Source of the DNA: Scyliorhinus canicula
Lineage: Eukaryota
Assembly (NCBI RefSeq): GCF_902713615.1
Contig: NC_052148.1
Span: 228,431,336-228,495,335 of the forward strand
Reading direction: 5' to 3'
DNA: 64,000 nt
The notes beneath the pieces are model-generated. The model saw nothing but the letters and a program-made list of their open reading frames with translations. It made no database searches and was not told where the DNA came from. Below are positions 27,734 to 57,525 of this stretch, in pieces (position 1 is the first letter of the stretch; each line of letters starts with the position of its first letter). A program made the translations under genes and the position numbers.

Positions 27734-27800
27734 ATGATGAAGACTAAACACGTGCTCGAGGTACTTGCAGCAATTCTACTTTACACAGCGCTTGCACCAG
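27734..27800 (+). CDS. JCHAIN: Immunoglobulin J chain, coding exon 1 (signal peptide MMKTKHVLEVLAAILLYTALAP)
   Basis: ATG at 27734, then 22 codons plus 1 nt, followed by donor G|GTAAAT (phase 1). Basic N-terminus and hydrophobic core typical of a signal peptide. Joins exon 2 in frame. Confidence 0.85.
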
Positions 27801-29199
27801 GTAAATTTTAATTATTATTATATTTTGCATTATGGCATATGATGAATAAATTCATGTGTGGTTAGCCCAGAAATATAGGATGAGTAGCGTCTTCGCCATA
27901 ATAATTAGACAGCATATCAGTGAACTTAGGTTAAGTGAGGATAATGATATGAGCATTTGCCGCAGATCATTACCATGGATTGAACTTTCAATGCTCATTT
28001 GTGATAGTTGTTAACTTACCCGACAATTCTTCCTTCTACATCTGAACAAGCATGCCAAAAGTACCCATCAATCCTAATGTTGAAGTATTTTTAGTTCTTA
28101 CAGCAAATATAGCTGTAGATTAAGCACTGACTATCTGTTTCTGTGTATTACAAAATGGACAACTTGCGCTTTTAATGAACTGAGCTGTTTTCATGATGTT
28201 GGTTGAGGGATGAATGGTAATCTGCAGATTGGGAGAATTCCCCTTGTTTTCATGAGAACTTTTATGTATGCTTGAGTGGGCAGGTCATTGCTCTGGTTCA
28301 ATGCCTTGTTCTGAAGAAAGTGACAGTGCTAGATTCTACAATCTTCTAAGTCATTCCAAAAGGCATGTTTTTAAAAAAAAGAATTTACTTGTTTTCTCCA
28401 TGAAGAAATTTAACAGTGAATGTTGCATTAGAGCCATGATATGTCAACGTTTACCATCGAAACTAGAGATAGTCCACTGTTGCACCTGAACAGTTTTGTC
28501 CCTGGTTTTCTCTCTCCTATGTTCAGTGTTTCCTAACAATAATTTTTGATGTTAAAACCTGCAATGTGAGGACACAGATTTCCCCAACGCATGCACAAAT
28601 TAGTAATTTCATCTATTAACTTTTATACTTCATAAGTCAGATTGTGTCTTTCAGAACCTTCTTATTACAGGCTTTCCAGCTTTCTATTTTTTCTTGACAG
28701 GAAGTGACCTGGCTCTGCTCGATACTTTAATGTGGACAGACCAGCTTCTAAAAGAATTTTCAATTTAAGAAATTGTTGAACATACATCTAACCTTTCTCG
28801 GTGGAGCAACGAGTTAGTATATTAATATGCCAATGCGTTAACTGCCAGGTTACGTCCACTGGATTATCAGCCACAAATAACAGCAAAATTGCTAGCTCAG
28901 GTTCTGCAATTAGCTGAATAGTCTATTCTTGTTTTAGGTCAATCTTTGATTAAAGTTTAAAGCTGGAAAAGATGCAGTTACCAATGAACTGTTGTAGTTA
29001 ATGATAAATTGCAGAATATGTCACAAGTGTTTGCGTTCAAATTAACTCATCTCTTTTGTAAACTAAAACGGGTCATGATACGTGCAGGATATGCATTTTT
29101 GCCTGTTTTAACTTTAACCAATAGCCTTGTCACTCTCCTGTAGTTGAATGTGATAAATATGTATTGTATTTGACTCAAAGCAAGCGAGGATTACAATGC

Positions 29200-30070
29200 A
29201 TTGGCTGAGGCTGTAAAGAGATATCAAAAGCTGTAAAAAGACATGGACAGGTTAAATGAGTGGGAAACAAGGTGGCAGATGGAGTATAATGTGAGAAGGT
29301 GTGAGGTTATCCACTTTGGTGATAAGAATAGAAAAGAAGATCTTTTTTTGAAAGTGAGAAACTTTGAGATGTTGATGTTCAGAGAGACTCGATGTACTTG
29401 TACATAAAAAACAAAAGTTAGCATGCGGGTACTGCAAGCAATTAGGAAAGGAAATAGCATGTTGGCCTTTATTGAAAGGTGATTGGCATGCAAGAATAAG
29501 AAACTTCTTACAGGACTTTGAAGAGACCACATGGAGTGCGGTGCACGGTTTTTGCTCTCCTTATCTCAAGAAGGATATACTTGCCTTGGAGGTAGTACAG
29601 TGAAGGTTCACTAGATTGGTCCCTAGGATGAGAGGGTTTCTAATGACGAGCGACTGAGTAAATTGAGCTTGTATTCTCTTGGGTTTAGAAGACTGAGAGG
29701 GGGATCTTGTTGACGCATAATTCTGAAGAGGCTTAACTGAGAGGATGTTTCCCTTGGCTGGGTAATGTAGAACACAGGAACGCCATTTCAGGAAAAGGGG
29801 TCAATCATCGTGGACTGAGATGAGGAGAAAATCTTTGACTCAGAGGTTTGTCAGTCTTAGGAATTCTCTACTCCAGACTGTTGTCAATGCTTCACCACTT
29901 CATTATTGAGTATATTCGAGGCTGGGATAAATAGATTTTCGAACTCTCAGGAATCCATGTGGTTTGGTGGTACATGGAAAAACGGAATTAAGGCAGAAGC
30001 TCACCCTCATTATGTCAAATGGCGGTGCAGCCTCGAGGGGCCACATGGTAGACTCAGCTCCAATTTTTAA
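29200..30070 (+). mobile_element. Old CR1 3' fragment in JCHAIN intron 1
   Basis: Decayed WQMEYNVRRCEVIHFG and LERLSKLSLYSL motifs. Confidence 0.85.
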
Positions 30071-30544
30071 GGTCTTATGTTTTTATAAGTGTGGCAGTAT
30101 GACTGATATTCTTTTTTACATCCCAAAACAGTATCAGCTCTGAGCTCACTCTGTACACAGATGCTAAATGGAACATTTTAGTTATAAAATATATAACTAT
30201 TATCGTGACAAGGCTATTCAAATTCAAAATTTATAACTTGCCACAATTAAAGTGATTGCAATAAAATGAAAGATTAGTACAAATGTGGCTAAATGAAGAC
30301 ATTTAAAAAAGGCTTTCAACAAAACATAAAAGTTTGTCAAGGATTATAAAATGACGGCATAATAATGAAAACAATTTCAAAAAACAGGAATATAAATAAA
30401 AACCTTTAATAAAATGCACAAAATTAAACAATAAAATTGTCATATCACATATAAACCGATTTTAAAAACTAAATTCTGCCTCTCAGCTTTAAAAAACATG
30501 CAGTTCAGTAAGTCCAAATCATAAGAAAGTATAAGAAAGTTCTA

Positions 30545-30635
30545 GAGTATTATTCGACTCGAAACGTTAACTCTTTCTCTCTCCACAGATGTTGCCAAAC
30601 CTGCTGAGCATTTCCAGCACTTTCTGTTTTTAGTT
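30545..30635. mobile_element. Short Penelope-like terminal fragment
   Basis: TCGAAACGTTAACTC...CACAGATGTTGCCAAACCTGCTGAG...CCAGCACTTTCTG. Decayed relative at 1040-1090. Confidence 0.45.
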
Positions 30636-30729
30636 TGCTTTAATAAAAAAGTATGCATGTTTCATGAAAATAAATTCAGGTCATGTTGTTCTTTTTTTAA
30701 GAAAAATTCTACATTGCTTTTTGAATGCT

Positions 30730-32430
30730 GTGCTCACTGGGGAACGGCTTCCCATTGACGCGTCCCTTGATGGGGCACTGAGTGCCATTGAACAAGGGAC
30801 CACTCTTGGAGCCCACAAGGAAGCCTACACAGGTTCGCTTTTCATGCTCTCCACATGCCTGGGTGGCATTGCCAAGCTGGCAGGAGCTGCCAAGATGCCA
30901 GGGTGGATGTGCATGGGTGCCAGGGTGGCCTGAAAGGAGGGTAGAGGGGGTATGAAGGGGGGGGGGGTGAAGGGTAAATAAGTAGGGGCCGCAGGGGGGT
31001 GGAGGGGGTGACCGCCACTGTCTTAATAACAGTAGCGGAAGGGTGCAGCCTGTAGTCAGCATTAATTGCCTTGAGGGCCTCCATTGGCAGAAGGGCACGA
31101 AGGCCGTCCATGGGACTTGCCACCACAGACTTAATTGAGGTGGAGGAGGGAAGGTAATGTCACCCTCCTGCCTGATTAAACACTCCCCCACATCACCAAA
31201 CCTGACACAGGGACAGGCATTAAATGCTTCCCTAGGTCAAAGGTAATGTTATAACATGGGTTGTTTTGGATTTAACAAATCGTGTTGTCAGGGATGGGAA
31301 CTGTTAGTTTTTCCATATCTAATCAATGACTTAGACGAGTTACAAAACAGGTTTACAGATGGCACTAAGTTAGAAGACACCGTAAATTACCAAAATGAGA
31401 ATAGGACATTAGAACAAGACATAGATCGACTAAATGACTGAGCAAAGCTGATGGAGCTCAATGTGGGGAAGTGTGATATCATCTACTTCAAATTGAAGGA
31501 AGACAAATCACAGCATTTTCCAGATGATGGGCAGAATTTAACAGAAACATTTTGAAGTTCATTTGTTTTGTAGAGTTTCCCGCTGGCTCTGCTGGCTAGT
31601 TCCCCACAACTATCCAACCACATTTGATTTTTTTGGGGGCCATGGGGAGTTTCTCACCGGTTTAGCCCACAATTAGAATTTTTTTCAGCGCTTGGGAGCT
31701 GAACTCAGAGATCAGACCGCCATTTTGAAACAGTGCCCCGATCTTTAAGTAGGCTTGTGGGTCCCCAGCAACCCACATCCATGGGCAATGACACTCCCCA
31801 CACACATGGACACTACCTCACACCCCTCCAAGCGAGGACACCCTGCTATGGGGTCCCTGGGGGTCTTCAGGCCCCCTCACACCCTCTGACAGGTCTCCCT
31901 CCTTCCTGAACCCCCACCTGTCACCCCCTCCACCCCCCTGCGGCCCCTACTTATTTACCCTTCACCCCCCCTTCATACCCCCTCTACCCTCCTTTCAGGC
32001 CACCCTGGCACCCATGCACATCCACCCTGGCATCTTGGCAGCTCCTGCCAGCTTGGCAATGCCACCCAGGCACCTTGGCAGTGCAAGATGCCAGCTGGGC
32101 AGTGCCAAGGTGCCTGTATTCCAGGGAGACGACCATGGGACCACCGTGCACTATCCCTGGGCACCCAGGGGCCGCCAATGGACCACATTTGTGCCCAGCT
32201 GCAGCCTCGCTGGGGTGGCTAGTAGATCCCGGGAGGCAGGGTAAGCTCATGTTAGTAGGTTTAAAACCTACATAAACCTACGGCCGAATGCTGTTTGTTC
32301 ACGCCCCTTTTGGGCGGGATTTTGATTCCAACGTCTCATGGGACTTGGGTATATCCCGCGAGGCGTAAAGGCTGCCGGGAGGCCCGCGGGAGGCCTCTGC
32401 CAGGATCTACCGCTCGCATTGTGTCCTCGT
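30730..32430. mobile_element. Two oppositely oriented Harbinger-type non-autonomous fragments in intron 1, sharing a near-perfect inverted segment
   Basis: 30856-31012 is the reverse complement of 31920-32072 except for G-tract length. Confidence 0.75.
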
Positions 32431-33083
32431 TGGAGCAAAACACAGCCTGTAGACCGCGTCCGACATTTGTATTTCCTCATACCAGGCAGTGTCTTCGTAA
32501 AATTACTCTATTCCACTTTCTGAAGCCTCAATATGCTTCCTATAATATGGAGCCCAATACTGCACATTAATCTAGCCGAGTCCTTCTGTTCAACATCACT
32601 GCAGTTTCCACTGTTGCGAAGGATACAATAATTGAATAATTAGTCGATTAGTTACAAGTTTATAATTTCAATCCCAATCTAGAATGTACCTTGGTGTATA
32701 TTTTGTTCACTCTGGGCACATGATAATGATGCAAATTCTGTGAAAGCAGATCCTGTCAATCTCTTGGCATTCACAAGTGGCACTTGGAGTCATCTAGAAT
32801 CTGGGTCAGCAGCTTTTCTTTTAAACTCTTTTGTTTGTGGCCCGATGCTGTCATTTCCAGTCCAATTTACTTCTGTTAACTAGCACTGGTCCTTGGTGAC
32901 TCACTTTGACAACAAGAGGTTCAGTGTGTGCATTTGATAAGAGCTCACACACAAAAACCATACCCATACCACTTAATTAATATCTAGCTGAAGTTACACC
33001 TGGGCTTCCAGTAAAGGAAGTATTAGTTCCTCATTTTAATGATAGTTGCTTCAGTGACTGAGTAACCATGTCTATCTTTACAG

Positions 33084-33204
33084 CTGACAGCCAACTTCTA
33101 GTTTCATCGAAATGTAAGCTTTTGGAGGTGAAAACCCGAATTGTTGTGACTGAATTACCTACTGGTGCAAGAGTGGAACATATCGCCAGAGATATAAAAA
33201 TCAC
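33084..33204 (+). CDS. JCHAIN: Immunoglobulin J chain, exon 2 (ADSQLLVSSKCKLLEVKTRIVVTELPTGARVEHIARDIKIT)
   Basis: Acceptor tctttacag and donor C|GTAAGT; 121 nt, phase 1 to 2. Aligns by eye with human LVDNKCKCARITSRII...IVERNIRIIV. Confidence 0.93.
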
Positions 33205-34334
33205 GTAAGTTGATGCATCGTTGATTCCCGATCATATTCACCATATGGTAAAATTAAATGGAAAGGAATATTGCTACAAACTGATGAGAGACAGTTCTGC
33301 ACTGTGAACACGAGAAAATAAATGGAAAGGCACATAACAGAGTGGAGACAATCATTTCATCATTCAGACTAAGGCAGGTAGAGCATAGTTCTCCTGTCGG
33401 GAATGCAGGAATTCTGTCACGCCAACCATCCCACCACCACTGTCCTACAAAACAATTTCATTCCCATGATGAGCATGTAGGCTAGCGAATCTGTCAAATT
33501 TCTCCTCCATTTCTACTTCGACATTTAAAAATATCAGAATTGTAAGGAATTCTATTACCGGGTCAAAAGATTCCGGTGGTAGGATAAGCAATGTGCACAG
33601 TTTTGGTGCTATTATTCCTGTAGGATGTTTCCAAAAGCAATGACAAACTGTTGCTGTAATGAACCAAAAATGGAAAACAGCAGCACGGCAATTTGGATTG
33701 CTGCACGTTGTTGAACTCACCTTGACTGGATGGACTTGTCCAGCTGGCTGGGTACGGTGCTGCATGAGATGTAGCGACAGGATGGAATACCAGACCATGG
33801 AAATCAAGCTGATTCCAGTTAATCACAAGATGAGGAAGCCATCTCTGCTTTATCCATCCCAAAAGCCCATTGTGGCACAGAATCATTTCTTAATTAATTC
33901 AAGAACTCTTTCCCCCAATATTCTCTTCAAAGTGCAATTTTACAATATTTGTTCTAATCAGTCATTGGATTACTCAGTCAATCGGTTTCAATTGCACAAT
34001 GTGTCATTAAGTTGGTTCGAAACTACCTTTATCAGTCAGATCAGAGAGAAAAACTAAAGCGGACTTGGGTTCGGTTTGAGTCATGCTACAAACATGACGA
34101 AGTTTAAAGTTACTTGAAAGGGGCAACCTTTTATTCTATTGATAATCCAGCTTGCCCTCAATTTCAGCATTGCTATTCAGCTATGTGTAAAGGACTTTAA
34201 ATGATTGATTTTATTTAACAGCATTATAAAATTTCACCTGTAATGAAACATATCCACACACAATATGATTTAGGGGCATATGTTGAGCATCCCTGGTAAT
34301 CTCGAGATGACTGTTAATTGCTCTTTCATTACAG

Positions 34335-34415
34335 AGTTCCAATGCGAACCAGAGTGAACATTTCAGATCCAACCTCCCCAATTCAGACCAAGTTTGTCTA
34401 CAAGATTTCAGATTT
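34335..34415 (+). CDS. JCHAIN: Immunoglobulin J chain, exon 3 (VPMRTRVNISDPTSPIQTKFVYKISD)
   Basis: Acceptor ctttcattacag and donor TT|GTATGA; 81 nt, phase 2 to 2. Near-diagnostic match to human VPLNNRENISDPTSPLRTRFVYHLSD, including the NIS glycosylation sequon. Confidence 0.97.
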
Positions 34416-35656
34416 GTATGATTGCTATTTTTTTTTATTACTTTCACGATGTATAATTTCAGTGTTCAAACCATCATTTCAATTCAGATTTTACAATGTG
34501 TCATGCATGTGGTGTACAAAGCAGAAACTAGTTACTTTAAATAATTTTGCCTCTTTCGAATGGATCAGATTATTCAGAAGCGACTGTATGATAGCTTTAG
34601 TGGGCCATTTTTGTGGAAGAAGAGGAGATGAAATGGAAGCAATCAAAATTAGAAATGCAAAGGATGGGGAAACATCTTTGTCTGGAAGGTGGATCAGTAA
34701 CCGAAAGGGAGGTGAATTGTGGTTGGAGCAGGTGCTGCCAACCATGCAGGAAATGACTCCAAGCTGAGAAACATTGAAGAATGACACAACATGGGGGGAG
34801 CATGGGCTCCAAGCTTTTTTGTGCGCTGCACTTTAAACCTTGGAGGATGTGACGAAAAGGAAGAAATATTGCTGTATCCACAGGATCCGGACACATACTC
34901 GGAAGGAGGTCTGAAAGGCAGTAGCAGTCAAGTAGTACTTGGTTCCCAGTATCCCTGTGATAGCGGATTGCCCCAGTGCCATGGGGGGGGTGGGGGTGCA
35001 TTTTTTAAAGCGCAAATCCGGGCACCCTTTAAAAAAGTGCCCCGATCTCTTGCCAGCTCTATCAGGCACTGCCCCACCACCGTGATGGCATGGACAACCC
35101 CTCCAACTGCAAGTCTGTTTTATCGCCAGCACTCTGTGCACAGAATGGAAAGTACCAGTCAATGAATGCATCTTCAAATGACATATCCTGCCAACTGCAC
35201 CACTAGCCTCAGACACGGTTCAATTTTCCACGCCCCCAAGACTAACCGACCAAAAATCTTTATCATTGAGGTCTCACACCTGGCATTCATATGCTCCACC
35301 TTACCCTCATACGCTTCACACTGCTGCCAGCCTCACACATGCATCTCACAGCTTGAGCACACTGCCAGCCATTCAACCATGGCAGAAACATCAACTAAAC
35401 AAATTGCACCACATTCACCGACCCACTTCCCTCTCTCTCTCTCCATAGCAGGACAAGTGGTGCAGAACTGGAGGCAACAGGAGCTAACTGGTTGGAAACA
35501 AGCCAATGGCAGAGTGCAAACCATTGAAGAAGAGTCTATCCTTATCAATAATCCTTCTCCTCAGATCCCCCCAACTCCTCATCCCACAATCTCTTCTGTT
35601 TTACAGGTTGCAGAAGCATGTACTTCTTGCTTTTCCCACATCATAACCTTAACTCT

Positions 35657-36005
35657 GGGCAGCACGGTAGCATTATGGATAGCACAATCGCTTCACAGCT
35701 CCAGGGTCCCAGGTTCGATTCCGGCTTGGGCCACTGTCTGTGTGGAGTCTGCACATCCTCCCCGTCTGTGCGTGGGTTTCCTCCGGGTGCTCCGGTTTCC
35801 TCCCACAGTTCAAAGATGTGCAGGTTAGGTGGATTGGCCATGATAAATTGCCCTTAATGTCCAAAATTGCCCTTAGTGTTGGGTGGGGTTACTGGGTTAT
35901 GGGGATAGGGTGGAGGTGTTAACCTTGGGTAGGGTGCTCTTTCCAGGAGCCGGTGCAGACTCGATGGGCCAAATGGCCTCCTTTGGCACTGTAAATTCTA
36001 TGATT
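35657..36005 (+). mobile_element. Young HE1-type SINE (intron 3)
   Basis: Same subfamily as 24296-24652. Confidence 0.93.
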
Positions 36006-36404
36006 ATCCTTCTGCCTTCCTCCTATCAAAGACCTATAAAGTGCAACCGAACCAGACAGTGGAGGATCAGCAAAACGACAATGACAATGAAGGCACATTG
36101 AGCTCACTTTCACACTCAGCCACCAGCTCAGACTCTGCTGTGTTTAAGGATAGCACAGAGGCAGTAGGAAGTCATGTGCTGCAGTGGATAGTGTCCCAGC
36201 CTCTGAACCAGAAGCTCTGGGTTCAAGTCACCCTATGGCCACGGAAGGAGCATTCTTAACGTGGCCAAACAGGTTAATTATCAACCTGCAAGCCCTTCCA
36301 AAGTGCCTACAGGGGGAGTCTCCTAGCCAGCCATGCTTGCTGCAGATTCCTTAGCTATAGCTTCTGGTGACAGGCTAGAGACCTGGACCAGGGTTCTCCG
36401 AGCC

Positions 36405-36920
36405 CGCAGTGGGTCAGAGAATCGCCGGGGTGGGCATGTAAATCCCGCCACGCCGCTCCGACACCGGGCCGCCGATTCTCCGGCGACCAGAGAATCGGCG
36501 GCAATCGTGCCAGCGCAGTCACCGCGGTGCCGGTCGGAGGCCGTTGAAAGCTGCAGCGATTCTGCGCGCTCGACGGGCCGATGCCCGCCAAGTCCCGTCG
36601 GCGTTGTTTGTGTATGGTCCTACCCGGCGGGACCTCGGCGTTCTGGCTGCGGGGGCCGTCCTGGTGGGGTAGGGGGGGCAAGTGGAACCAGCTCTGGGGA
36701 GGTTTCTCAGCTGCTCAGTTGGTAGCAAGGTCTGTCCCTTCCTGATGGTGAGGTAGTACAACACACACTGGCCAGAATTCTCCCACCATCGGGATTCTCT
36801 TTTCCCACCGGCAGCGCACCCTGCCCACGGGTTTCCCGGCCGTGTGGGGTGACTTCAATGGGAAATTCCATTGATAAGCTGCGGGGAGACAGAATCCCGC
36901 CACCAGCGAATGGTGCGCCG
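36405..36920. mobile_element. Harbinger-type MITE fragments immediately 5' of the 46-bp array
   Basis: GAGAATCGCC, GATTCTCC and CAGAATCCCGCC motifs shared with the MITE at 56558-57252. Confidence 0.7.
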
Positions 36921-39900
36921 CCCAGCAATACACTGCGCGGGAACCGGAGATTCCCGTCAAGCAGATCCCAGCAACACGCGGCGAGGGAACCGGAGATTCC
37001 CGTCCAGCAGATCCCAGCAACACGCGGCTAGGGAACCGGAGATTCCCATCCAGCAGATCCCAGCAACACGCGGCGAGGGAACCGGAGATTCCCGTCCAGC
37101 AGATCCCAGCAACACACGGCTAGGGAACCGGAGATTCCCGTCCAGCAGATCCCAGCAACACGCGGCTAGGGAACCGGAGATTCCCGTCCAGCAGATCCCA
37201 GCAACACACGGCTAGGGAACCGGAGATTCCCGTCCAGCAGATCCCAGCAACACGCGGCGAGGGAACCGGAGATTCCCGTCCAGCAGATCCCAGCAACACG
37301 CGGCTAGGGAACCGGAGATTCCCGTCCAGCAGATCCCAGCAACACGCGGCTAGGGAACCGGAGATTCCCGTCCAGCAGATCCCAGCAACACGCGGCGAGG
37401 GAACCGGAGATTCCCATCCAGCAGATCCCAGCAACACACTGCGAGGGAACCGGAGATTCCCGTCCAGCAGATCCCAGCAACACGCGGCTAGGGAACCACA
37501 GATTCCCGTCCAGCAGATCCCAGCAACACGCGGCGAGGGAACCGGAGATTCCCGTCCAGCAGATCCCAGCAACACACTGCGAGGGAACCGGAGATTCCCG
37601 TCCAGCAGATCCCAGCAACACGCGGCTAGGGAACCTGAGATTCCCGTCCAGCAGATCCCAGCAACACGCGGCTAGGGAACCGGAGATTCCCGTCCAGCAG
37701 ATCCCAGCAACACGCGGCTAGGGAACCTGAGATTCCCGTCCAGCAGATCCCAGCAACACGCGGCGAGGGAACCGGAGATTCCCATCCAGCAGATCCCAGC
37801 AACACGCGGCTAGAGAACCGGAGATTCCCGTCCAGCAGATCCCAGCAACACGCGGCTAGGGAACCGGAGATTCCCATCCAGCAGATCCCAGCAACACACT
37901 GCGAGGGAACCTGAGATTCCCGTCCAGCAGATCCCAGCAACACGCGGTGAGGGAACCGGAGATTCCCGTCCAGCAGATCCCAGCAACACGCGGCGAGGGG
38001 ACCGGAGATTCCCGTCCAGCAGATCCCAGCAACACGCGGCGAGGGAACCGGAGATTCCCATCCAGCAGATCCCAGCAACACGCGGCTAGGGAACCGGAGA
38101 TTCCCGTCCAGCAGATCCCAGCAACACACTGCGAGGGAACCGGAGATTCCCGTCCAGCAGATCCCAGCAACACACTGCGAGGGAACCGGAGATTCCCGTC
38201 CAGCAGATCCCAGCAACACGCGGCGAGGGAACCGGAGATTCCCGTCCAGCAGATCCCAGCAACACGCGGCTAGGGAACCTGAGATTCCCGTCCAGCAGAT
38301 CCCAGCAACACACGGCTAGGGAACCGGAGATTCCCGTCCAGCAGATCCCAGCAACACGCGGCTAGGGAACCGGAGATTCCCATCCAGCAGATCCCAGCAA
38401 CACACCGCTAGGGAACCGGAGATTCCCGTCCAGCAGATCCCAGCAACACGCGGCGAGGGAACCGGAGATTCCCGTCCAGCAGATCCCAGCAACACGCGGC
38501 GAGGGAACCGGAGATTCCCGTCCAGCAGATCCCAGCAACACACGGCTAGGGAACCGGAGATTCCCGTCCAGCAGATCCCAGCAACACGCGGCTAGGGAAC
38601 CGGAGATTCCCGTCCAGCAGATCCCAGCAACACGCGGCGAGGGAACCGGAGATTCCCGTCCAGCAGATCCCAGCAACACGCGGCGAGGGAACCGGAGATT
38701 CCCGTCCAGCAGATCCCAGCAACACACGGCTAGGGAACCGGAGATTCCCGTCCAGCAGATCCCAGCAACACGCGGCTAGGGAACCTGAGATTCCCGTCCA
38801 GCAGATCCCAGCAACACACTGCGAGGGAACCGGAGATTCACGTCCAGCAGATCCCAGCAACACGCGGCTAGGGAACCGGAGATTCCCGTCCAGCAGATCC
38901 CAGCAACACGCGGCTAGGGAACCGGAGATTCCCATCCAGCAGATCCCAGCAACACACTGCGAGGGAACCTGAGATTCCCGTCCAGCAGATCCCAGCAACA
39001 CGCGGCGAGGGAACCGGAGATTCCCGTCCAGCAGATCCCAGCAACACGCGGCGAGGGGACCGGAGATTCCCGTCCAGCAGATCCCAGCAACACGCGGCGA
39101 GGGAACCGGAGATTCCCATCCAGCAGATCCCAGCAACACACTGCGAGGGAACCGGAGATTCCCGTCCAGCAGATCCCAGCAACACACTGCGAGGGAACCG
39201 GAGATTCCCGTCCAGCAGATCCCAGCAACACACGGCTAGAGAACCGGAGATTCCCGTCCAGCAGATCCCAGCAACACGCGGCGAGGGAACCGGAGATTCC
39301 CGTCCAGCAGATCCCAGCAACACGCGGCGAGGGAACCGGAGATTCCCGTCCAGCAGATCCCAGCAACACACTGCGAGGGAACCGGAGATTACTGTCCGGC
39401 AGATCCCAGCAACACGCGGCTAGGGAACCGGAGATTCCCGTCCAGCAGATCCCAGCAACACGCGGCTAGGGAACCGGAGATTCCCGTCCAGCAGATCCCA
39501 GCAACACACTGCGAGGGAACCGGAGATTCCCGTCCAGCAGATCCCAGCAACACGCGGCGAGGGAACCGGAGATTCCCGTCCAGCAGATCCCAGCAACACA
39601 CGGCTAGGGAACCGGAGATTCCCGTCCAGCAGATCCCAGCAACACGCGGCTAGGGAACCGGAGATTCCCATCCAGCAGATCCCAGCAACACACCGCTAGG
39701 GAACCGGAGATTCCCGTCCAGCAGATCCCAGCAACACGCGGCGAGGGAACCGGAGATTCCCGTCCAGCAGATCCCAGCAACACGCGGCGAGGGAACCGGA
39801 GATTCCCGTCCAGCAGATCCCAGCAACACACGGCTAGGGAACCGGAGATTCCCGTCCAGCAGATCCCAGCAACACACGGCTAGGGAACCGGAGATTCTCG

Positions 39901-40048
39901 TCCAGCAGATCCCAGCAACACGCGGCTAGGGAACCGGAGATTCCCGTCCAGCAGATCCCAGCAACACGCGGCTAGGGAACCGGAGATTCCCGTCCAGCAG
40001 ATCCCAGCAACACGCGGCGAGGGAACCGGAGATTCCCGTCCAGCAGAT
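36921..40048. repeat. 46-bp minisatellite, 68 units, in JCHAIN intron 3
   Basis: Consensus CCCAGCAACACGCGGCGAGGGAACCGGAGATTCCCGTCCAGCAGAT. The span is 3128 bp, exactly 68 x 46, so there is no net indel. Confidence 0.97.
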
Positions 40049-40409
40049 CACCAGGAATCCTGACATCTACTTCGCTCAGCCGTCCAAGCATTCTTTTAAC
40101 ATCCCAATGTTCTGCTCTGTCATTCTGTGTGGCATTATGGCTTTCCGTGTCCCAGAAGGAGTTATGAACAAGGAAATGGAAATGAGGGAGGAACTCGGGA
40201 ACATTACAGCCACCAGAGAAGTGGTACTGAGCAAATTGTTGGAACTGGGGGAGTTGTTACACACCACAGTGATCAGCCAGATGGTAATTGGATCACCCTT
40301 GGTCATCCTTTGGTTTCTCATGGCAACTCGAGCGCAACTGGTACAGTGAGCTGCCATGGAGTGAAGGAATCACAAACTGCACCACGCCTCATCTCCTCCA
40401 ATCTTCAAT

Positions 40410-40742
40410 AGGGCAGCACGATAGCACAGTAGTTAGAACTGTTGCTTCACAGCTCCAGGGTCCCAGGTTCGATTCCCGGCTTGGACCACTGTCTGTGCGG
40501 AGTCTGTGTGTTTTCCCCGTGTGTGCGTGGGTTTCCTCCGGGTGCTCCGATTTCCTCCCACAGTCCAAAGATGTGCGGGTTAGGTAGATTGGCCATGCTA
40601 AATTTCCCCTTAGTGTCCAAAAAGGTTAGGCGGGGTTATGGGGTAGGGTGGAGGTGTGGGCTTAAGTAGGGTGCTCTTTCTAAGGGCTGGTGCAGATTCG
40701 ATGGGCCGAAGGGCCTCCTTCTGGACTGTAAATTCTATGGTG
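40410..40742 (+). mobile_element. HE1-type SINE
   Basis: Full head, core and tail. Confidence 0.9.
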
Positions 40743-40759
40743 TGAAAATCGCATGGACT

Positions 40760-41245
40760 TCTCTGTCAGTAAGATTGAGACTACCGTTACCATATCCCAC
40801 CCTTCCACTGATCCATCAGACTAAATTTCCTCTAAAGGTTCCCCCCTACCCAAGACTTGAACTCACATCTTTCTCAAGTTTCTATCCACTGTCCCCCCTC
40901 ATGCCCTCTCCAAGCTCGTCTTGTCCATTAGATTTACCTCCTGTCCTGTTCCTATTCTCACTAAACTGCTAACCACTGAACTTTGTCTCTTCATCCTCAT
41001 ATTAGCTGATATTACTAACTCTCTTCAGGTACTGTTGCCTCATCACCGCACACGCCAATAAAAGCCGACCCCTTTACTCCTCCACCATTCCAAACTACCG
41101 CCCTATCTCTCGTTCCTCTCCAAAGCCCCTGAACATGTTGCCATCTCCCAAATCCATTCCCATCTTTCCTGGAACTGCATGTTGAATCCCTCCAACCAGG
41201 TTTCCAGCCCTGTCACATCAATGGTGCTGACCAAAGTCACAAATG
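40760..41245 (+). mobile_element. L2 LINE RT fragment
   Basis: NYRPIS-like region; related to 63400-64000. Confidence 0.7.
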
Positions 41246-41247
41246 AG

Positions 41248-41545
41248 GACGGCACGGTGGCACAGTGGTTAGCACTGTTGCCTCACACTCCATTCCGAAC
41301 TCAGGTCACTGTCTGTGCCGATTTTGGACTTTCTCCCCGTGTCTGCGTGGGTTTCCTCCGGGTACTCCGGTTTCTTCTCATCGTCCAAAGATGTGCAGGT
41401 TAGGTGGATTGGCCATGCTAAATTGGCCCTAGGTGGAATAACAGGGATGGTGTGGATATTGGGCCTAGGTAGGGTGCTCTTTCAGAGGGTTGGTGCAGGC
41501 TCGATGGGCCGAATGGCCTCCTGCACTGTAGGGATTCTATGACAT
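41248..41545 (+). mobile_element. HE1-type SINE (older)
   Basis: Head, core and tail are recognisable, with an internal deletion. Confidence 0.85.
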
Positions 41546-41989
41546 CCTATGTGACTGCGATAAAGGCAAACATTGATTCATAAATTCATAGACCTTTACA
41601 GCATAGAAGGAGGCCATTCAGCCCATCATGTTTTTGACACGGTTGACTACACCATCCTCCTCAAATGCCTCTCCACTGTGAGGCAGCTGGGTGGAACTCT
41701 GAAGGGATGAGGTATTGACCGGGGCCAGCCAAGCGATGAAGCTTAAAGGGTATCAGATATGTGAGTGAATGCTGGCCACCGGAGAAGGTGAAGAAATGAC
41801 AGACTCCAGGGCCAGGAGCAAACGTTGTGCCAGGAAGGCCTGAAGGCAACTGGTGAGAACACCAGCCTGACTGTCTCTCTCTTTCTCTCTCTCTCACACA
41901 TCCCTCGCAGAATTCCAAGAGATTTTAGTATGGAGCCAGTGGAGCTGTCAATTCTACTCATCACAGACTCCAGCAACTAAGAGAGGCCA

Positions 41990-42800
41990 CAGCCAGGGAA
42001 AACCCAGCACCAGGAGGCCAGGGCAAGCTCAAGGGTCAGCCACGGTTCAAGGCAGATATGGGCTTGAAGTTGAAGAAGAAGGAGGGTTTTCATGGAGCTG
42101 TCGGACATGTGCCGCAGGAGACTCCGCCACACAAGGGGGACTGTGCAACACATGTGCCATCTTTTTTCAAACCTGGCATCTGATGGAGGAGGAGGAGGAC
42201 ACCAGTTTTCTGTGACTGTGAAAGTCATGGTCGCCCTCAGCTATTACACCACTGGATCATTCTAGGATTCAACGGGAATCTTTGTGGCATCTCACAGACA
42301 TCATCCCACAAATAAATCCGTGACGTGATGGATGCACTCTATGTCATGGCCTCGGTCTGCATTAATCTTGACCAGGCCCATCAGGATGAGAGGGCTGTGG
42401 TTTCTGTTACCATCGTTGGTATGCACTGGTGCAAAGGGGCCATTGATGGCATTCATGTGACACTACACACCCCCGTGGCATCAGGGAATCCCATACATTA
42501 AAAGAAAGGGGTTCCACTCCCTTAACATGCAGCTGGTGTGTGACCACCAGATGAAGATCATGTACATGTGAGCACATTTTCCAGGGAGCATGCATGATAG
42601 CTCCCTCTTTGTGCAGTCTCAAATCCCTGGAATATTCAAGGGTCATCCCAAGCTGCAGGGATGCCTAATTGTGGACGAGCAATACCCGCTGTGGCCTTGG
42701 CTGATGATGTCTGTGCGGAGGACTGAGACCGGAGCACAGTCCCATTACAACAAGGCTCACAGTGCCATCTGGTCTGTGACTGTGCAGTCTGCTGAAGATG
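41990..42800 (+). pseudogene. Harbinger DDE nuclease (HARBI1-like) pseudogene
   Basis: Motifs DMCRRRLR, LCGISQTSSH, GAIDGIHV, KGFHSLNMQLVCDHQ, FPGSMHDS and YPLWPWLM, with stops and frameshifts. Confidence 0.88.
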
Positions 42801-43479
42801 TGCTTCCACTGCCTTGAGTAGTCCAGTCGGGCCCTTCAATACAGTCCACCGAGAGTCTCCCACACATTTGTGGTACGCTGTGTCCACCATAACGTAGCGC
42901 AACAGTGGGGCAACATTCTCAATGAAGAAGACCAGACCAGGAACGTTTCCTCTAATGAGAAGGACGTCTAGGTGGGGGTGAAAGAAGAGGTCAAAGATCA
43001 GCCGGAGGTTGGAGGCCAGGCAAGGGACAAGGGTTCGCGTGGTCAGGTGCACCAGGGATGCCCTCATCACGTTCCAGTTTGCACAATAACACCATCATGT
43101 TGTCCATCAGCTCTACGACCCCCCCAACACCCCCAAGACCTTTAGGACCCCCTTCAGGACTGAGGGTGGAGGTCCATTACAAAACTATCTCATGGGGGTG
43201 CTGGGCCTGGTGCATGCTTAGCAGGAGGGTGATGACCACTCGCAGTGAGGAAAGTTCTGATACTCCTCAGCTTTTGGGTATGGCTGACTCCAGTCTGTCT
43301 GCTGCGAGCAGACTGACTCTCCGACTTATTGCCACTGAGAGTCGGGGCCACATCCCTTTGGCCTGCTGCTCTAGAGGAGGTTAGGGGGTTATGGTTCACT
43401 GCTTAATGGCAGAGTCCTTCCAGAATCTAATTGATTTTCTGTTTGAGTGGCATAACCTTTAACCTTACATTGAGGGAAA

Positions 43480-43935
43480 GTGGGAAAAGCTGTGTCCAGA
43501 TGGAGTGAGGACCTGTTCAAGTGGGGAGAGGCTCAAAGAGGGTGAGGCCTTCAGGTTGTGAATAAGGGAGGCTGAGGGGCAACCTGATAGAAGTTCATAA
43601 AATTATGAAGGGTATAGTTAGGGTGAACAGTTGGAGGTTTTTTCCCAGTGCGAAAATGACAATTACAAGGGGTCACAAGTTCAAGGTGAGGGGGTAAAGG
43701 TTCAGTTCAGTGGGGATGTGCGGGGTAAGTTTTTTTACACAGAGGGTGGTGGTGGCCTGGAATGCACTGCCAAGTGACGTGGTTGAGGCAGATACATTAG
43801 CGACCTTTAAGACTTACCTGGATAGGCACATGAACAGACGGGATATAGAAGGATACAGACGGTTAGTCTAGATAAGATACGTGATTGGTGGGGCTTGGAG
43901 GGCCGAAGGGCCTGTTCCTGTGCTGCACTGTTCTT
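43480..43935 (+). mobile_element. CR1 3' fragment inserted in the Harbinger element
   Basis: TRGHKFKVRG region and tail GGGCCGAAGGGCCTGTTCCTGTGCTG. Confidence 0.88.
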
Positions 43936-43939
43936 TCTT

Positions 43940-45620
43940 CATTGTACCTCTGGGTGTATTCCCAGGCTGCACATCAGAAGTGGAGGCGGCCTGCTCCTTT
44001 TCATACCTGTTGCCTGAAATGTTCTTGGTGGCTGTCCTGTGGAGGGCCTGGAGCTGGAGGGACCCAGCCCACTTTCGGGTGACACTGATGTTTCCGCGTC
44101 ACCCTGTTCTGCCTGCTTCCCCCCGAGAAGCACAGGTATCAGGAAAGGGGGGGGGGGGGGATCAGAAGGCATGGTCACTCCCTGGGTCTCTTGGGCGGAA
44201 GGTCCAGCACATCCTCCTCCCTCTGGGTGCTCGCGGGCCACTAGGTAACTCTACTGGATGGAGGGGCAGCTGGAGTGAGCTCCAGAGCCTCAACGCCAGT
44301 CCTGGAGGCCCCCAGTGTCTGAACAATACGATTGAAGCCCTCAACCAAGGTCCTCGGGAACTGGGGCACGCATTGCCCCAGGCTTTCCACTGCAGATGCC
44401 ACCCTTGCCATGTTGACCTGGGTGCCAAGCATTGCCGGCAACATTCCTATGACTGAAAGCTTTGGGACTCCTCCATTCCTCCTTGTAGTTGGAGGAATGT
44501 CGCTGACAAACCCTTCCTGGTATTCCTGGCTCTGTCTTTGCATCTATAACAGCTGAGGGATGAACGTGTCCACAGCACAGCACCTGGCTGGGGCTCGGCT
44601 GAGTCCTGGGATCCAGCAGACCTCCGACTGCCTGATCTCTGGGACGTTCCTGTCTCCAGCTGATCTGCATCAGAGGCTGTGTGGTGCTCACCAGAAAGTG
44701 ACCCAGAAGCCTGTCTGCTACGTTCTCCCACCAAGGTGTGTGTCTGCACTGGTGAATGGTGAAGGTGATAGCTGTGACATATCATCCACCTCCTCCTCAG
44801 ACATCTCCAAGATGCTGTCAAGGGTAGAAGGGGGCACTGTTATTGACAACAGCGGCTCATTGGTTGATGTTCCTGCAAGGCAGGGGACATAGTTTTAATA
44901 CATGGCCTTGTCAAAGTTTTGGACAACAAATACCTCACTTGAGACTGGTCAATGAATGAGGGTGCAATGGCTCCTCACCTTCCTGTCACAGGCCAACCTT
45001 GTTCTCTGTGCACGCCCACTCCTAGTTCTGCACTGTGAGTTCCATGGCCCTCTCTTCAAAAGGGGTTATGATCCTTAGTTTGGGCATTTCACCGCCTGTC
45101 AACTCTCTCCCTCTCTCTCTCTGGTTGTGGATAATCTCCTCCTGCGGGAACAGAAAAGGGGATAATGTGAGCAGAATGCCTGGCGGATCAGAGGTCGTGA
45201 ATAACTAGCATATGTGGGCACTGTGCTTAAGTAAGGGAGGGCTCTTATGAGAAGTGCCAGGTGGTTTGAGGATGATACTGGGAGATCGGGTGCTGAGGAC
45301 CTGCAAGGTGGTATCACGTGGGTTCAAGGGGACATTTTGGGGATGATGGAAGGATTGAATGCCACAGACAGACAGGGAGCACTTACCCTTACAGATCGCA
45401 GTAGGTCATTCATTTTTTTCCTACGTTAAATCCTTTTCCTCTTGGTCATACCACTGGCACTAACCAGTGCTGCCACTGTCTCCCAGGTGGGATTGGTGCC
45501 CTTGCTGGAGGGCCTCATGCCAACACGCGGGAAGATTGTGAACCGCCTCTCCTCCCCAGCATCCAGCAATCGAGTCAGAACCTCTTCCAAGAACCTGGGA
45601 GCTGGTCTTCTATCTGCCAT
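43940..45620 (-). pseudogene. Harbinger Myb/SANT-like DNA-binding protein pseudogene with spliceosomal introns
   Basis: MADRRPAPRFLEEVLTRLLD...WETVAALVSA...(stop)RRKKMNDLLRSVR, then donor GTAAGT at 45386-45381. Acceptor near 45145; second donor GTGAGG near 44980. Confidence 0.85.
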
Positions 45621-45744
45621 CCTCCTCGGTTAAATGGGAGTGAGTGCTGTGGAGTCGGTTAAATACAGCGCCCCCTTGATTAAATTGCTCAGATGACCCC
45701 CACGCCGAGGAGGGCGAATCAGACACTTCACGCCTCATGTGAAA

Positions 45745-45930
45745 AAAAATTAAAATGAAAATCGTTTATTGTCACAAGTAGGCTTCAAATGAAGTTACTG
45801 TGAAAAGCCCCTAGTCGCCACATTCCGGCGCCTGTTTGGGGAGGCTGGTACGGGAATTGAACCGTGCTGCTGGCCTGCCTTGGCCTGCTTTCACAGCCAG
45901 CGATTTAGCCCTGTGTGCTAAACCAGCCCC
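45745..45930 (-). mobile_element. tRNA-derived SINE (GGGGCTGGTTTAGCAC family)
   Basis: Near-identical to 7508-7709. Confidence 0.88.
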
Positions 45931-46520
45931 TGGAGGGTGGAGGAACGTAATCTCACAAACTGCCTAAAGGTGGCGCTCTGGACCACCCCACTGGTGCTGG
46001 TGGAATTCGCCCCCTGTTTTCAGTGCCAAAAATGACACTTTGGCATATTTCGGAAATTTACGGCCATTAACTTTGTCGTTCAGAATTTCACCAGAGTCAG
46101 AAGTGCTGTGAATAGGATTTTCAGCCACGCTTATCCCAGCGTTGACCCATATCCTCTATTAGCTGAAGAGCTACATTTCGTGAGAATATCTTGGTAGATT
46201 CTCTGGAACCACTTTCCTACCAGCACTGTGATTGACTGTCTTTAGGATGTTAGTATTAATCCCCCACCTCTTAGCTTGTACCATTAGTTTGACTGCATCA
46301 CAGATTGTCCTCTTGAATTCACTGTGAATGGATATTAGTTACATGCAAAAGAGTTCCTTGTCAATTTGAACATGCTAAATGAGTTGAAAAAATTTATTCT
46401 AAAGTCATTCAACTGCATGTTAGATAAAGCTGTTTGTTGAACATCTAATGACTTTCAGATATCAGTGTTATGTATTCAATGGTAATTATATCTTTGATAA
46501 TCTTTGACATCTTTCTACAG

Positions 46521-46722
46521 CTGCAAGAATTGCACCCCAAAGTCATCTCCACTCGTACCTCAGTGCAACCCCAAACCTCCACCCATTGATGAATGTTACG
46601 CCCATGAAAACAAAACATGCGGGCACACCCAAAGACGTGAAGTTAGTTTATGGCATCAAACCCCTACAGTGGCACCTGTTGAAACGACAGTAGATTTGTC
46701 ATCGATATCAGATGCTCCATAG
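46521..46722 (+). CDS. JCHAIN: Immunoglobulin J chain, exon 4 (CKNCTPKSSPLVPQCNPKPPPIDECYAHENKTCGHTQRREVSLWHQTPTVAPVETTVDLSSISDAP*)
   Basis: Acceptor ctttctacag; TT|C gives Phe, then CKNC (human LCKKC). CY-x6-C spacing matches human CYTYDRNKC, and a VET motif lies near the C-terminus. TAG at 46720-46722. Total CDS is 471 nt, or 156 aa. Confidence 0.92.
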
Positions 46723-46820
46723 ATTGTTCTAAAGATTATACAGATAATTGCCCCTGTTTCTTTACGGCATTTTAGCTTTGTCTTTTAGCCATACTGGCCT
46801 TTTACCTTCTTGGAACAGAT

Positions 46821-46853
46821 AATAAAATTCTTTGCTGCTTGCTTCATAATAAA
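46821..46853 (+). terminator. Candidate JCHAIN polyadenylation signals (two AATAAA)
   Basis: AATAAA at 46821-46826 and 46848-46853, 100-130 nt after the stop codon, followed by GT/T-rich sequence. Confidence 0.65.
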
Positions 46854-46989
46854 CACTGCTCTCCATATTATGCATCATTTGTAAATGTGTCATGTTTTGC
46901 GGCAAAATTGAGACAATGGGAAAACACGGCATGCTGGCACTCAATACCCATTTTCTAAAAGTGAACACTGGAACAGTTGAAATATTTAA

Positions 46990-47042
46990 GAGTAAGAAGT
47001 CTCACACCAGGTTAAAGTCCAACTGGTTTATTTGAAATCACA
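46990..47042. mobile_element. Truncated Penelope-like terminal repeat fragment just 3' of JCHAIN
   Basis: AGTAAGAAGTCTCACACCAGGTTAAAGTCCAAC matches 57475-57510; the hammerhead part is absent. Confidence 0.55.
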
Positions 47043-55667: not shown

Positions 55668-56557
55668 GGCTGAAGGAGGGGCAGGACTGGCAGCTCAATG
55701 TTCCGGGGTACAGATGCTATAGGAAACATATAGCAGGAGGTAAGAGAGGAGGGAGAGTTGTGTTTTTGATTAGAGACAGTATCACGGCAGGAGAGAAGAG
55801 GATATAGCCAAGGGTTCGCCCACTGAGTGTATATGGGTAGAACTGAAAAATAAGAAGGGTGAGATCACTTTGATAGGACTGTACTATATGCCCCCAAATA
55901 GTCAGAGGGAAATTGAGAAGCAAATATGTAAGGAGATTGCAGATAGCTGCTGGAAAAATAGGATGGTAATAGTAGGGAACTTCAACTTTCCCAACATTAA
56001 CTGGGACAGCCATAGCACTAGGGGTTTGGATAGAGAGAAATTTGTCAAATATTCAGGAAGAATTCCTCATTCAATATGTGGATGGCCTGACTAGAGAGGA
56101 GGCAAAACTTGACCTCCGCTTGGGGAATAAGGAAGGGCAGGTGATGGAAGTGTTCATGAAGGATCACTTTGGGACCAGTGACCATTATTCCATTAGTTTT
56201 AAGATAGCTATGGAGAATGATAGTTCTGGCGCAAAAGTTAAAATTCTAAATTGGGACAAGGCCAATTTCGATGGTGTTAGGCTGGAACTTTCAAAAGTTG
56301 TTTGGGGCAGCCTGTTTACAGGCAAGGGGACAGCTGATAAGTGGGAGTCTTTCAAAAGGGTGTTAACTAGGGTTCAGGATGAGCACATTCCTCTTACAGT
56401 AAAGGATAAGGCTGGTAGAAGTAGGGAACCCTGGATGACTCGGGATATTGAGGCCATGGTCAAAAGGATGAAGAGGCATATGACATAGACAGCTGGGATC
56501 AAGTGGAGCCCTAGAAGAGTATAGGGCTTGTCGGAGTAGAGTTAAGAGAGAAATCAT

Positions 56558-57252
56558 GGACGGTATTCTCCCCCGCCACACCGGCTGGGTGAATCACCGG
56601 GGCGCCGCGCGAATCGCGCCACGCTGCCCCGACCCAGCACACGATTCTCCCACCCCACCGAAACGAGCGCCACGAGAATCGCGCCAGGCCGCTCGGAGAA
56701 TCGCCGCAAATGGCGAGCAGCAATTCTCCGGCCCGGATGGGCCGAGCGGCCGCTCCGACCCGACAGGTTCCCACCGGCGCCGTCCACCCCTAGTCACTGC
56801 CGGCAGGAACTGTGCGGGAACGCTGGGAGGGTGGCCTGTGAGGGGGGGAGGGGGGCTCCTTCACCGGGTTGGGGGGGGGGGGGGGGGGGGGGGCTCCGAT
56901 GGGGTCTGGCCCGCGATGGCGACCCACCGATCGGCGGGCTGGCCTCTCCCCCCGCGGGCCTACATCCTTCGGCGGCCGGCCCCAGAACACCGGCGCCATG
57001 TTGGTGAGGGGCCGGCGCGCTTAAGAAGTTTCCTGCGCATGCGTAGGATGGCACGGCCCAACTGCCCATGCGCACCAATATGCGAATAAGCCGCGTAAGG
57101 ATGCTGGAGTGGCGTGAACCACTCCAGCGCCGTGCTGGCCCCCTGTGGGAACCAGAATAGGTTGTGTCCAGGCGCCTGTTCGTGCCGTCGTGAAACACAA
57201 CGGCGTTCACGACGGCACGGGCACTTAGTCCCGGAAGCGGAGAATCCCGCAC
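56558..57252. mobile_element. Harbinger-type MITE (695 bp) inserted in CR1
   Basis: Imperfect TIRs GGACGGTATTCTCC and (rc) GTGCGGGATTCTCC. 3-bp target CAT/CAG, consistent with a CWG target. CR1 rejoins as GAAATCAGGAGGGC. Confidence 0.88.
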
Positions 57253-57525
57253 CAGGAGGGCAAAAAAGGGGGCATGAGATTGTCTTGGCCGATAAGGCAA
57301 AGGAAAATCCAAAGAGCTTTTGCAGATATATAAAGGGCAAATAAGTGACTAGGGGGAAGGTAGGGCCTCCTAAGGATAAACAAGGTCATCTATGTGCAGA
57401 TCCACAAGAGATGGGAGAGATCCTAAATTAATATTTCTCATCAGTATTTACTGTTGAGAAAGGCACGAATGTTAGTAAGAAGTCTTACACCAGGATAAAA
57501 TCCAACAAGTTTGTTTCAAACACTA

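What the first reader, a model, noticed from the sequence alone, without database searches (positions are those of the whole stretch)
36921..40048. About 58 tandem consensus NF-kB sites in a 68 x 46-bp array inside JCHAIN intron 3
Seen: each intact unit contains GGAGATTCCC, whose reverse complement GGGAATCTCC fits the kB consensus GGGRNWYYCC exactly (first site 36946-36955). By my reading about 10 of the 68 units carry variants that break it. Spacing is a fixed 46 bp, and each unit has up to five CpGs. Established: NF-kB drives B-cell activation and plasmablast differentiation, when JCHAIN is switched on. Inference: this could be a transposon-derived, copy-number-variable, methylation-gated kB enhancer or sink in a plasma-cell gene. 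It could equally be an incidental motif inherited from the MITE.
Basis: partly seen in the sequence, partly recalled or inferred. Interest (0 to 1): 0.7.

Follow-up and report, generated by a model that had tools for sequence, protein, structure and literature searches.

The report
Transposon-end minisatellite in shark JCHAIN intron
A real 68-unit, 46-base tandem repeat with 58 perfect NF-kB-type motifs sits in intron 3 of the catshark J-chain gene, but the motif was copied from the end of a very common jumping gene and shows no sign of being preserved, so it is most likely an ordinary passenger.

Summary
A 46-bp x 68.1-copy array without indels lies at 36921-40054. Fifty-eight units carry GGGAATCTCC on the minus strand and 10 units have it broken. 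The consensus unit has five CpGs. The array lies in intron 3 (34416-46520) of the annotated Scyliorhinus canicula JCHAIN gene.

The enhancer or sink reading is not supported.
- The array abuts the right end of a very abundant MITE-like element (about 36384-36905).
- The whole 46-bp unit aligns to the last ~46 bp of that family (0 of 2000 shuffles reach the score).
- The family's terminal repeat already reads GGGATTCTCC, itself a strict kB match. It differs from the array's decamer by one base, at the free N position of the consensus.
- Within the array the decamer is not protected: 7 distinct variant states in 10 bp against 12 in the other 36 bp.
- 86% of variant cells lie at the five CpGs, which points to germline methylation.
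- About 1.3% of random units of this composition would carry a kB match.

Rel binding, chromatin state, copy-number variation and the orthologous introns of other sharks could not be tested. First readers of this scan noted kB-motif minisatellites at other loci of this genome.

The parts
36921..40054 (.). 46-bp minisatellite, 68.1 units, no indels, GC 0.62, CpG observed/expected 0.85
36946..36955 (-). first of 58 exact GGGAATCTCC decamers (strict GGGRNWYYCC match), recurring every 46 bp; on the minus strand it reads C-GGGAATCTCC-G, with a CpG at both edges
36384..36905 (+). MITE-like dispersed element abutting the array (boundaries approximate); its left 300 bp are collinear with the full copy at 56556-57255, and its right end reads CAGAATCCCGCC
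   Evidence: thousands of contigs at 85-95% likeness in two species; score 51.5 against a null maximum of 26
36865..36906 (+). proto-unit: the element's last ~43-46 bp, which align to the whole array unit
   Evidence: family-majority letters: score 17.5; 0 of 2000 shuffles reach it
56556..57255 (+). fuller copy of the same MITE family with terminal repeats close to GCGGGATTCTCCG; its right end aligns to unit positions 19-44
27734..27800 (+). JCHAIN exon 1 (start codon, signal peptide), followed by a phase 1 intron
33084..33204 (+). JCHAIN exon 2
   Evidence: 100% identity to P0011 residues 24-62
34335..34415 (+). JCHAIN exon 3 (81 nt); intron 3 follows at 34416-46520
   Evidence: E = 8e-8 to solved J chains
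46521..46722 (+). JCHAIN exon 4 with stop codon
   Evidence: 100% identity to P0011 residues 91-156

Best explanation
This is an ordinary, fairly young or homogenised intronic minisatellite. It grew by replication slippage and unequal exchange from the last ~46 bp of an abundant MITE-like transposon that sits directly upstream. The kB-consensus decamer is a passenger. The family's terminal repeat already reads GGGATTCTCC, and the founder unit had GGGAATCTCC, one change at the free N position. Array growth then multiplied it to 58 copies at a fixed 46-bp spacing. The array is probably CpG-methylated, like other intronic repeats in cartilaginous fish, is transcribed only as part of the JCHAIN pre-mRNA, and has no dedicated NF-kB function. 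Shown here: the array, the motif count, the intron placement, the high-copy flank, the homology of the unit to the element's end, the lack of protection of the decamer, and the CpG-centred variation. Inferred: the growth mechanism, the methylation state and the lack of function.
For: Array and counts. The flank 36185-36919 is high-copy in two species: 4500 contigs were laid in X6 and 292 in X10. Left-half homology to the MITE copy at 56556-57255 scores 51.5 against a null maximum of 26. The unit against the family-majority end scores 17.5, against a maximum of 14.5 in 2000 shuffles. Three other element ends in the window align to the same part of the unit in the same orientation. Two of the 8 kB-consensus hits outside the array are this terminal repeat. 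The unit-type string shows multi-unit duplications (CKLMFEGGB/CKBMFGGPB and DCNBBDE/DCNBBDR), the mark of unequal exchange. The decamer has 7 distinct variant states in 10 bp against 12 in 36 bp, so it is not depleted. Eighty-six of 100 variant cells lie at the G of the five CpGs. [quoted passage not shown] The chance that a unit of this composition holds the consensus is 1.3%. There is no special single-strand fold (z = -1.0) and no Rfam family.
Against: GGGAATCTCC is a genuine kB sequence: it occurs in FLRG (PMC5372544) and is one of the sites in a synthetic NF-kB-inducible promoter (10.1101/2024.08.05.606664). Multimerised kB sites are potent in reporters, so if the array were open in B cells it would probably respond. 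The array keeps CpG observed/expected at 0.85 against 0.35 in the rest of the intron; this fits youth but also fits germline hypomethylation. In run X1 the unique intron DNA beside the array is covered at depth 24-35, although that run holds only 0.3 Gb of contigs. If that library measures open chromatin rather than RNA, this would count against a silent passenger. No binding, methylation or accessibility data were available.
Confidence: 0.78

Rival explanations
1. The array is a transposon-derived, NF-kB-responsive intronic enhancer of JCHAIN. Rel dimers would load on up to 58 sites when B cells are activated. CpG methylation at the C directly 5' of each site would gate access, and copy number would tune the output.
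For: There are 58 strict consensus sites. The decamer is a genuine kB sequence in FLRG, and methylation of the -1 C inhibits binding (PMC5372544). The same decamer is used in a synthetic NF-kB-inducible promoter. There is a precedent in the 40-bp VNTR of the human IGH hs1.2 enhancer, which binds NF-kB and has copy-number-dependent reporter activity (PMC3068965). The array keeps a CpG-island-like composition. The locus is enriched in run X1, whose library type is unknown.
Against: The motif is inherited from a transposon end present in very many copies. There is no within-array protection of the decamer. The CpG-centred decay argues for germline methylation. Sites with a C at -1 are the weaker and rarer class among functional sites (PMC5372544). 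The J-chain papers read here name IL-2/IL-5 and Blimp-1 and say nothing about NF-kB at this gene. No functional data exist.
Confidence: 0.08
2. The array acts through something other than NF-kB. It could be a CpG-island-like block or a platform for another factor; for example, each unit has two Ikaros-core GGGAA motifs. Such a block could influence chromatin, elongation or splicing across the 12-kb intron 3.
For: GC is 0.62 and CpG observed/expected is 0.85 over 3.1 kb. GGGAA occurs on both strands of every unit, and RCGTG once per unit. The array makes up 26% of intron 3.
Against: These short motifs are expected by chance. No conservation data exist. High CpG is explained by youth or homogenisation. 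No structured RNA or DNA signal was found.
Confidence: 0.05
3. The array is an NF-kB sink or decoy that buffers free Rel dimers in the nucleus.
For: Many identical sites lie in one place. A sequestering role has been proposed for Alu-borne kB sites (PMC6032270).
Against: Fifty-eight sites are few beside the kB-consensus decamers in the dispersed family. At 36867 most laid contigs read C, which gives GGGAAATCCC, at a summed depth of about 23,800 of 28,400 in X6. The terminal repeat GGGATTCTCC recurs elsewhere in this window alone. A single locus cannot change the genome-wide pool much.
Confidence: 0.01

Closest known systems
Minisatellites (VNTRs) that grow out of transposon ends or interiors
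   Same: Head-to-tail units of 46 bp, interspersed unit variants, multi-unit duplications, a start directly at the end of a dispersed element, and a unit homologous to that element's terminal ~46 bp.
   Different: It happens to lie in JCHAIN and to carry a strict kB consensus. Copy-number polymorphism was not tested.
Human IGH 3' regulatory region hs1.2 enhancer 40-bp VNTR (PMC3068965)
   Same: A tandem repeat of about 40 bp in a B-cell/antibody locus whose units carry an NF-kB consensus. In hs1.2, copy number changes reporter output and binding was shown by EMSA.
   Different: hs1.2 has 1-12 copies inside a mapped enhancer with a conserved core. Here there are 68 copies with no known enhancer, no binding data, and a clear transposon origin.
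Transposon-borne NF-kB sites such as Alu kB elements (reviewed in PMC6032270)
   Same: The kB-type motif is part of a very abundant mobile element and is spread passively.
   Different: The carrier is a DNA-transposon MITE end in a shark, and the site has been amplified locally by tandem duplication rather than by transposition.
Synthetic multimerised kB promoters (for example SFNp, 10.1101/2024.08.05.606664)
   Same: Many kB decamers in a row, including this exact decamer.
   Different: The synthetic arrays are unmethylated, about 12-bp spaced, placed beside a minimal promoter and made of mixed high-affinity sites. Here there is one site type at 46-bp spacing, deep in an intron.

Membership tests
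Minisatellite / VNTR | Head-to-tail repeats with a unit of about 10-100 bp and high identity | tested here: met
   Period 46, 68.1 copies, 95% matches, 0% indels
Minisatellite / VNTR | Interspersed unit variants and multi-unit duplications, as left by unequal exchange | tested here: met
   18 unit types; repeated blocks CKLMFEGGB/CKBMFGGPB and DCNBBDE/DCNBBDR
Minisatellite / VNTR | Copy number varies among individuals | not testable with these tools
   Only short-read contigs were available, and these collapse the array
MITE-derived sequence | The flanking element is a high-copy, non-coding dispersed repeat | tested here: met
   4500 contigs at 85% likeness or more were laid on 36185-36919 in X6, and the family is also present in a second species, X10
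MITE-derived sequence | Terminal inverted repeats and a target-site duplication | tested here: inconclusive
   The copy at 56556-57255 has matching ends close to GCGGGATTCTCC (score 9.5; null 95th percentile 8.0, maximum 11.5). The copy beside the array has degenerate ends, and no target-site duplication was identified
MITE-derived sequence | The array unit is homologous to the element | tested here: met
   The family-majority end aligns to the whole unit with score 17.5; 0 of 2000 shuffles reach it. Three further ends align to the same part of the unit
Functional NF-kB enhancer | Match to the kB consensus GGGRNWYYCC | tested here: met
   58 exact GGGAATCTCC
Functional NF-kB enhancer | Sites preserved more than the surrounding sequence | tested here: not met
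   7 distinct variant states in the 10-bp decamer against 12 in the other 36 bp. A cross-species comparison was not possible
Functional NF-kB enhancer | Rel protein occupancy and inducible activity | not testable with these tools
   No ChIP, EMSA or reporter data
Functional NF-kB enhancer | Open, hypomethylated chromatin in expressing cells | not testable with these tools
   Indirect evidence only: variants concentrate at CpGs, which suggests germline methylation, while CpG observed/expected is still 0.85
CpG island | Longer than 500 bp, GC above 0.55, CpG observed/expected above 0.65 | tested here: met
   3128 bp, GC 0.62, observed/expected 0.85; composition only
CpG island | Unmethylated in the germline and in tissues | not testable with these tools
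   No bisulfite data
JCHAIN gene (context) | Four exons with intron phases 1-2-2, encoding a J chain | tested here: met
   Exons checked one by one. Phases are as described in PMC10801876. P0011 carries PF15097

The most novel reading that the evidence does not exclude
The array is a lineage-specific, copy-number-variable, methylation-gated NF-kB-responsive element, domesticated from a MITE end, that tunes J-chain output in catshark plasma cells. Through J-chain output it would tune the balance of pentameric to monomeric IgM, which in sharks is said to be set by J-chain expression (PMC10801876).
Probability: 0.06. Interest if true: 0.75.

Novelty: new member of a known kind. Interest (0 to 1): 0.25.

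Why it matters
If the array were a working kB enhancer, it would be a natural multimerised-site enhancer born from a transposon end in an ancient antibody-assembly gene. It would also offer a handle on how sharks decide between pentameric and monomeric IgM. As it stands, it is mainly a caution. In this minisatellite-rich and MITE-rich genome, a strict transcription-factor consensus repeated dozens of times can arise from a single inherited motif. The count of sites therefore adds no evidence of function. The side observation that the terminal repeat of a very abundant MITE family is itself a kB-consensus match may matter more for genome-wide motif scans in sharks than this one array does.

Tried and rejected
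- Pfam and PDB sequence searches with the exon 1, 2 and 4 pieces alone gave no J-chain hit. Only exon 3 did. The gene was then confirmed through P0002 and P0011.
- The joined spliced protein was never built or searched.
- The ORF at 48605-50092 was tested as a possible neighbouring gene. It is a 15-bp repeat artefact.
- blastn of the array flanks against the rest of the window found no other copy. A more sensitive local alignment was needed to link the flank to the MITE at 56556-57255.
- A search for inverted repeats bracketing the array (upstream flank against downstream flank) found nothing convincing. I therefore do not claim that the array is internal to one MITE. It abuts a MITE's right end.
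- Fetching the JCHAIN locus of S. torazame, Cetorhinus, Mustelus and Hemiscyllium, and of S. canicula itself, failed because the assembly files are too large. Only gene spans were returned.
- Copy number could not be calibrated from contig depths, and the tool itself warns against doing so.
- The single-strand DNA fold of three units is unremarkable. There is no Rfam family in 33000-47000.
- A look-up of earlier findings by sequence was blank, which means nothing.

Full report
**What is there**

The stretch 36921-40054 is a single tandem array of period 46 with 68.1 copies, 95% matches and no indels (sequence read). Cutting it into 68 units gives 18 unit types. The commonest unit, seen 16 times, equals the consensus.

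The decamer GGAGATTCCC occupies unit positions 26-35. Its reverse complement, GGGAATCTCC, satisfies GGGRNWYYCC. It occurs exactly 58 times, all on the minus strand, all inside the array, and nowhere else in the window. Ten units break it: six read CCTGAG, and one each reads CCACAG, TTCACG, TTACTG and TTCTCG. The consensus unit has five CpGs.

**Gene context**

The window has no N. The exons were checked one at a time by reference.
- Exon 3 (34335-34415, 81 nt) translates to a peptide that hits solved immunoglobulin J chains at E = 8e-8.
- The exon 4 piece found a 171-aa basking-shark J chain-like protein carrying PF15097.
- Among that protein's relatives is P0011, "immunoglobulin J chain-like [Scyliorhinus canicula]", 156 aa.
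- The exon 2 and exon 4 translations are 100% identical to P0011.
- The annotated gene span of 18,989 bp equals 27734-46722.

The exons are 27734-27800, 33084-33204, 34335-34415 and 46521-46722. The intron phases are 1-2-2, as described for all JCHAIN genes (PMC10801876). The array therefore lies in intron 3 (34416-46520). It starts 2.5 kb behind exon 3 and makes up 26% of the intron.

**Is it more than chance?**

The array itself is far beyond chance. The motif is a different matter, because 58 copies are one motif in one founder unit, multiplied by array growth.
- Shuffling the unit's letters shows that 1.3% of 46-bp units of this composition contain a strict kB match on one strand or the other.
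- This 64-kb window alone holds five separate tandem arrays.
- First readers of this scan have noted at least four other kB-motif tandem repeats (three minisatellites and a tandem triplication) at other loci of this genome. These notes are unchecked and serve only as a base-rate hint.
- Outside the array the consensus occurs 8 times in about 61 kb, about what its information content predicts.

**Origin of the unit**

I laid contigs of public runs on 36010-37058 at 85% likeness. The stretches 36185-36300, 36395-36680 and 36745-36919 belong to very high-copy dispersed repeats. In a WGS-like run of the source species 4500 contigs were laid, and the family is also present in a second species. Depth drops at 36920, where the array begins.

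The left 300 bp of the flanking element (36384-36677) are collinear with the left 300 bp of a fuller copy at 56556-57255 (score 51.5 against a null maximum of 26). That copy ends in inverted repeats close to GCGGGATTCTCCG and carries GCGCATGCG motifs. It looks like the abundant Harbinger-type MITE described in earlier notes of this scan. I confirmed the high copy number and the end structure, but not the superfamily.

Taking the letters that most family contigs show at six variable places, the element's last ~46 bp align to the entire 46-bp unit with score 17.5. None of 2000 shuffles reaches that score. Three other element ends in the window align to the same part of the unit in the same orientation.

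In those ends the decamer reads GGGATTCTCC, which is itself a strict kB match. Two of the eight non-array kB hits, at 52630 and 57239, are this terminal repeat. The array's decamer differs from it by one base, at the unconstrained N position. About 20 bp further into the family's end, most copies read GGGAAATCCC, another kB match, at a summed depth of about 23,800 of 28,400 in run X6.

The kB consensus is thus a family trait of a very abundant transposon end.

**Signs of selection or of methylation inside the array**

If the decamer were being kept, variants should avoid it. They do not.
- There are 7 distinct variant states in the 10 bp of the decamer, against 12 in the other 36 bp.
- By cells, 86 of 100 departures from the consensus lie at unit positions 12, 14, 17, 26 and 36. 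These are exactly the G of the unit's five CpGs. Concentration of change at CpGs is what germline cytosine methylation produces.
- A cartilaginous-fish methylome shows pervasive methylation that includes transposons and gene bodies (PMC5437953).
- CpG observed/expected is still 0.85, against 0.35 in the rest of the intron. I read this as youth or homogenisation, but germline hypomethylation would give the same figure.
- The order of unit types shows duplicated multi-unit blocks, the usual trace of unequal exchange.

**What speaks for a function**

- GGGAATCTCC is a genuine kB sequence. It is cited as an NF-kB consensus site in FLRG (PMC5372544).
- With one more G it is the consensus given for NFRKB (PMC3439487).
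- It is one of the sites in a synthetic NF-kB-inducible promoter.
- On the minus strand each site reads C-GGGAATCTCC-G. Methylation of the C directly 5' of a kB site inhibits binding, and such sites are the rarer and weaker class (PMC5372544).
- Nine units have lost that C and keep the motif. "Methylation-gated" is therefore a fair mechanistic description of what would happen if the array were ever exposed.
- The closest real precedent is the 40-bp VNTR of the human IGH hs1.2 enhancer (PMC3068965).

None of this shows that the array is exposed or bound.

**Transcription and other species**

- The array's sampled words occur in 18 runs of 7 studies. Nearly all are from the source species. One run is from a second species, at a share of 0.13.
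- One raw oligo-dT RNA run of unknown tissue shows no reads on the array.
- Run X1, whose library type is not on record, holds perfect contigs of the unique intron DNA next to the array at depth 24-35. In that run the array bin 36955-36989 sums to 2337, about 68 times the single-copy depth. This fits even coverage of the whole intron, for example pre-mRNA from a J-chain-rich tissue, but I cannot tell.
- The JCHAIN loci of other sharks could not be fetched; only gene spans came back. The key comparative test therefore remains open.

**Verdict**

My best explanation is a passenger minisatellite grown from a MITE end (0.78). An NF-kB enhancer of JCHAIN remains possible (0.08), as does a role through another factor or through CpG density (0.05). 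A sink is very unlikely (0.01). This is a new member of a known kind, and interest is low to moderate.

Noticed in passing
window 36921-40054 (unit positions 12, 14, 17, 26, 36): Every multi-unit variant position is the G, never the C, of one of the unit's five CpGs. Two are G>A, which fits 5mC deamination on the minus strand. Three are G>T, which does not. The strand bias and the G>T class are unexplained, and few independent events underlie them.
   Followed up: partly
window 56556-57255; also 52601-52645 and 36384-36905: The terminal repeat of a very abundant MITE family reads GCGGGATTCTCCG, so it contains a strict kB-consensus decamer. Most family copies also read GGGAAATCCC about 40 bp from the right end. 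Genome-wide kB motif scans in this shark will be dominated by this family.
   Followed up: partly
window 36010-36982, run X1: A run of unknown library type with only 0.3 Gb of contigs covers the unique intron DNA beside the array perfectly at depth 24-35. Transposon bins are only about 100-fold higher in that run, against thousands-fold in a WGS-like run. The locus is therefore enriched there, either as pre-mRNA or as open chromatin; this is undecided.
   Followed up: no
window 48742-50349: A 15-bp x 107 tandem array (unit CTGCTGCACTCTCCG, GC about 0.65, strongly skewed) lies 2 kb behind the JCHAIN stop codon. It creates long spurious ORFs of up to 716 aa.
   Followed up: partly
window 5765-6599: A 21-bp x 40 tandem array is open in several frames on both strands. 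Its translation gives weak coiled-coil-type Pfam hits, which are probably artefacts of the repeat.
   Followed up: partly
window 35640-36000, 40410-40750, 41250-41540: Three copies of the typical shark tRNA-derived SINE lie in intron 3, on both sides of the array.
   Followed up: no
P0011 against P0002, P0008, P0009, P0013 (alignment A1): The two Scyliorhinus J chains lack a stretch of about 12 residues in the exon 4 region that basking shark, smooth-hound and whale shark have in full; the epaulette shark has about half of it.
   Followed up: no
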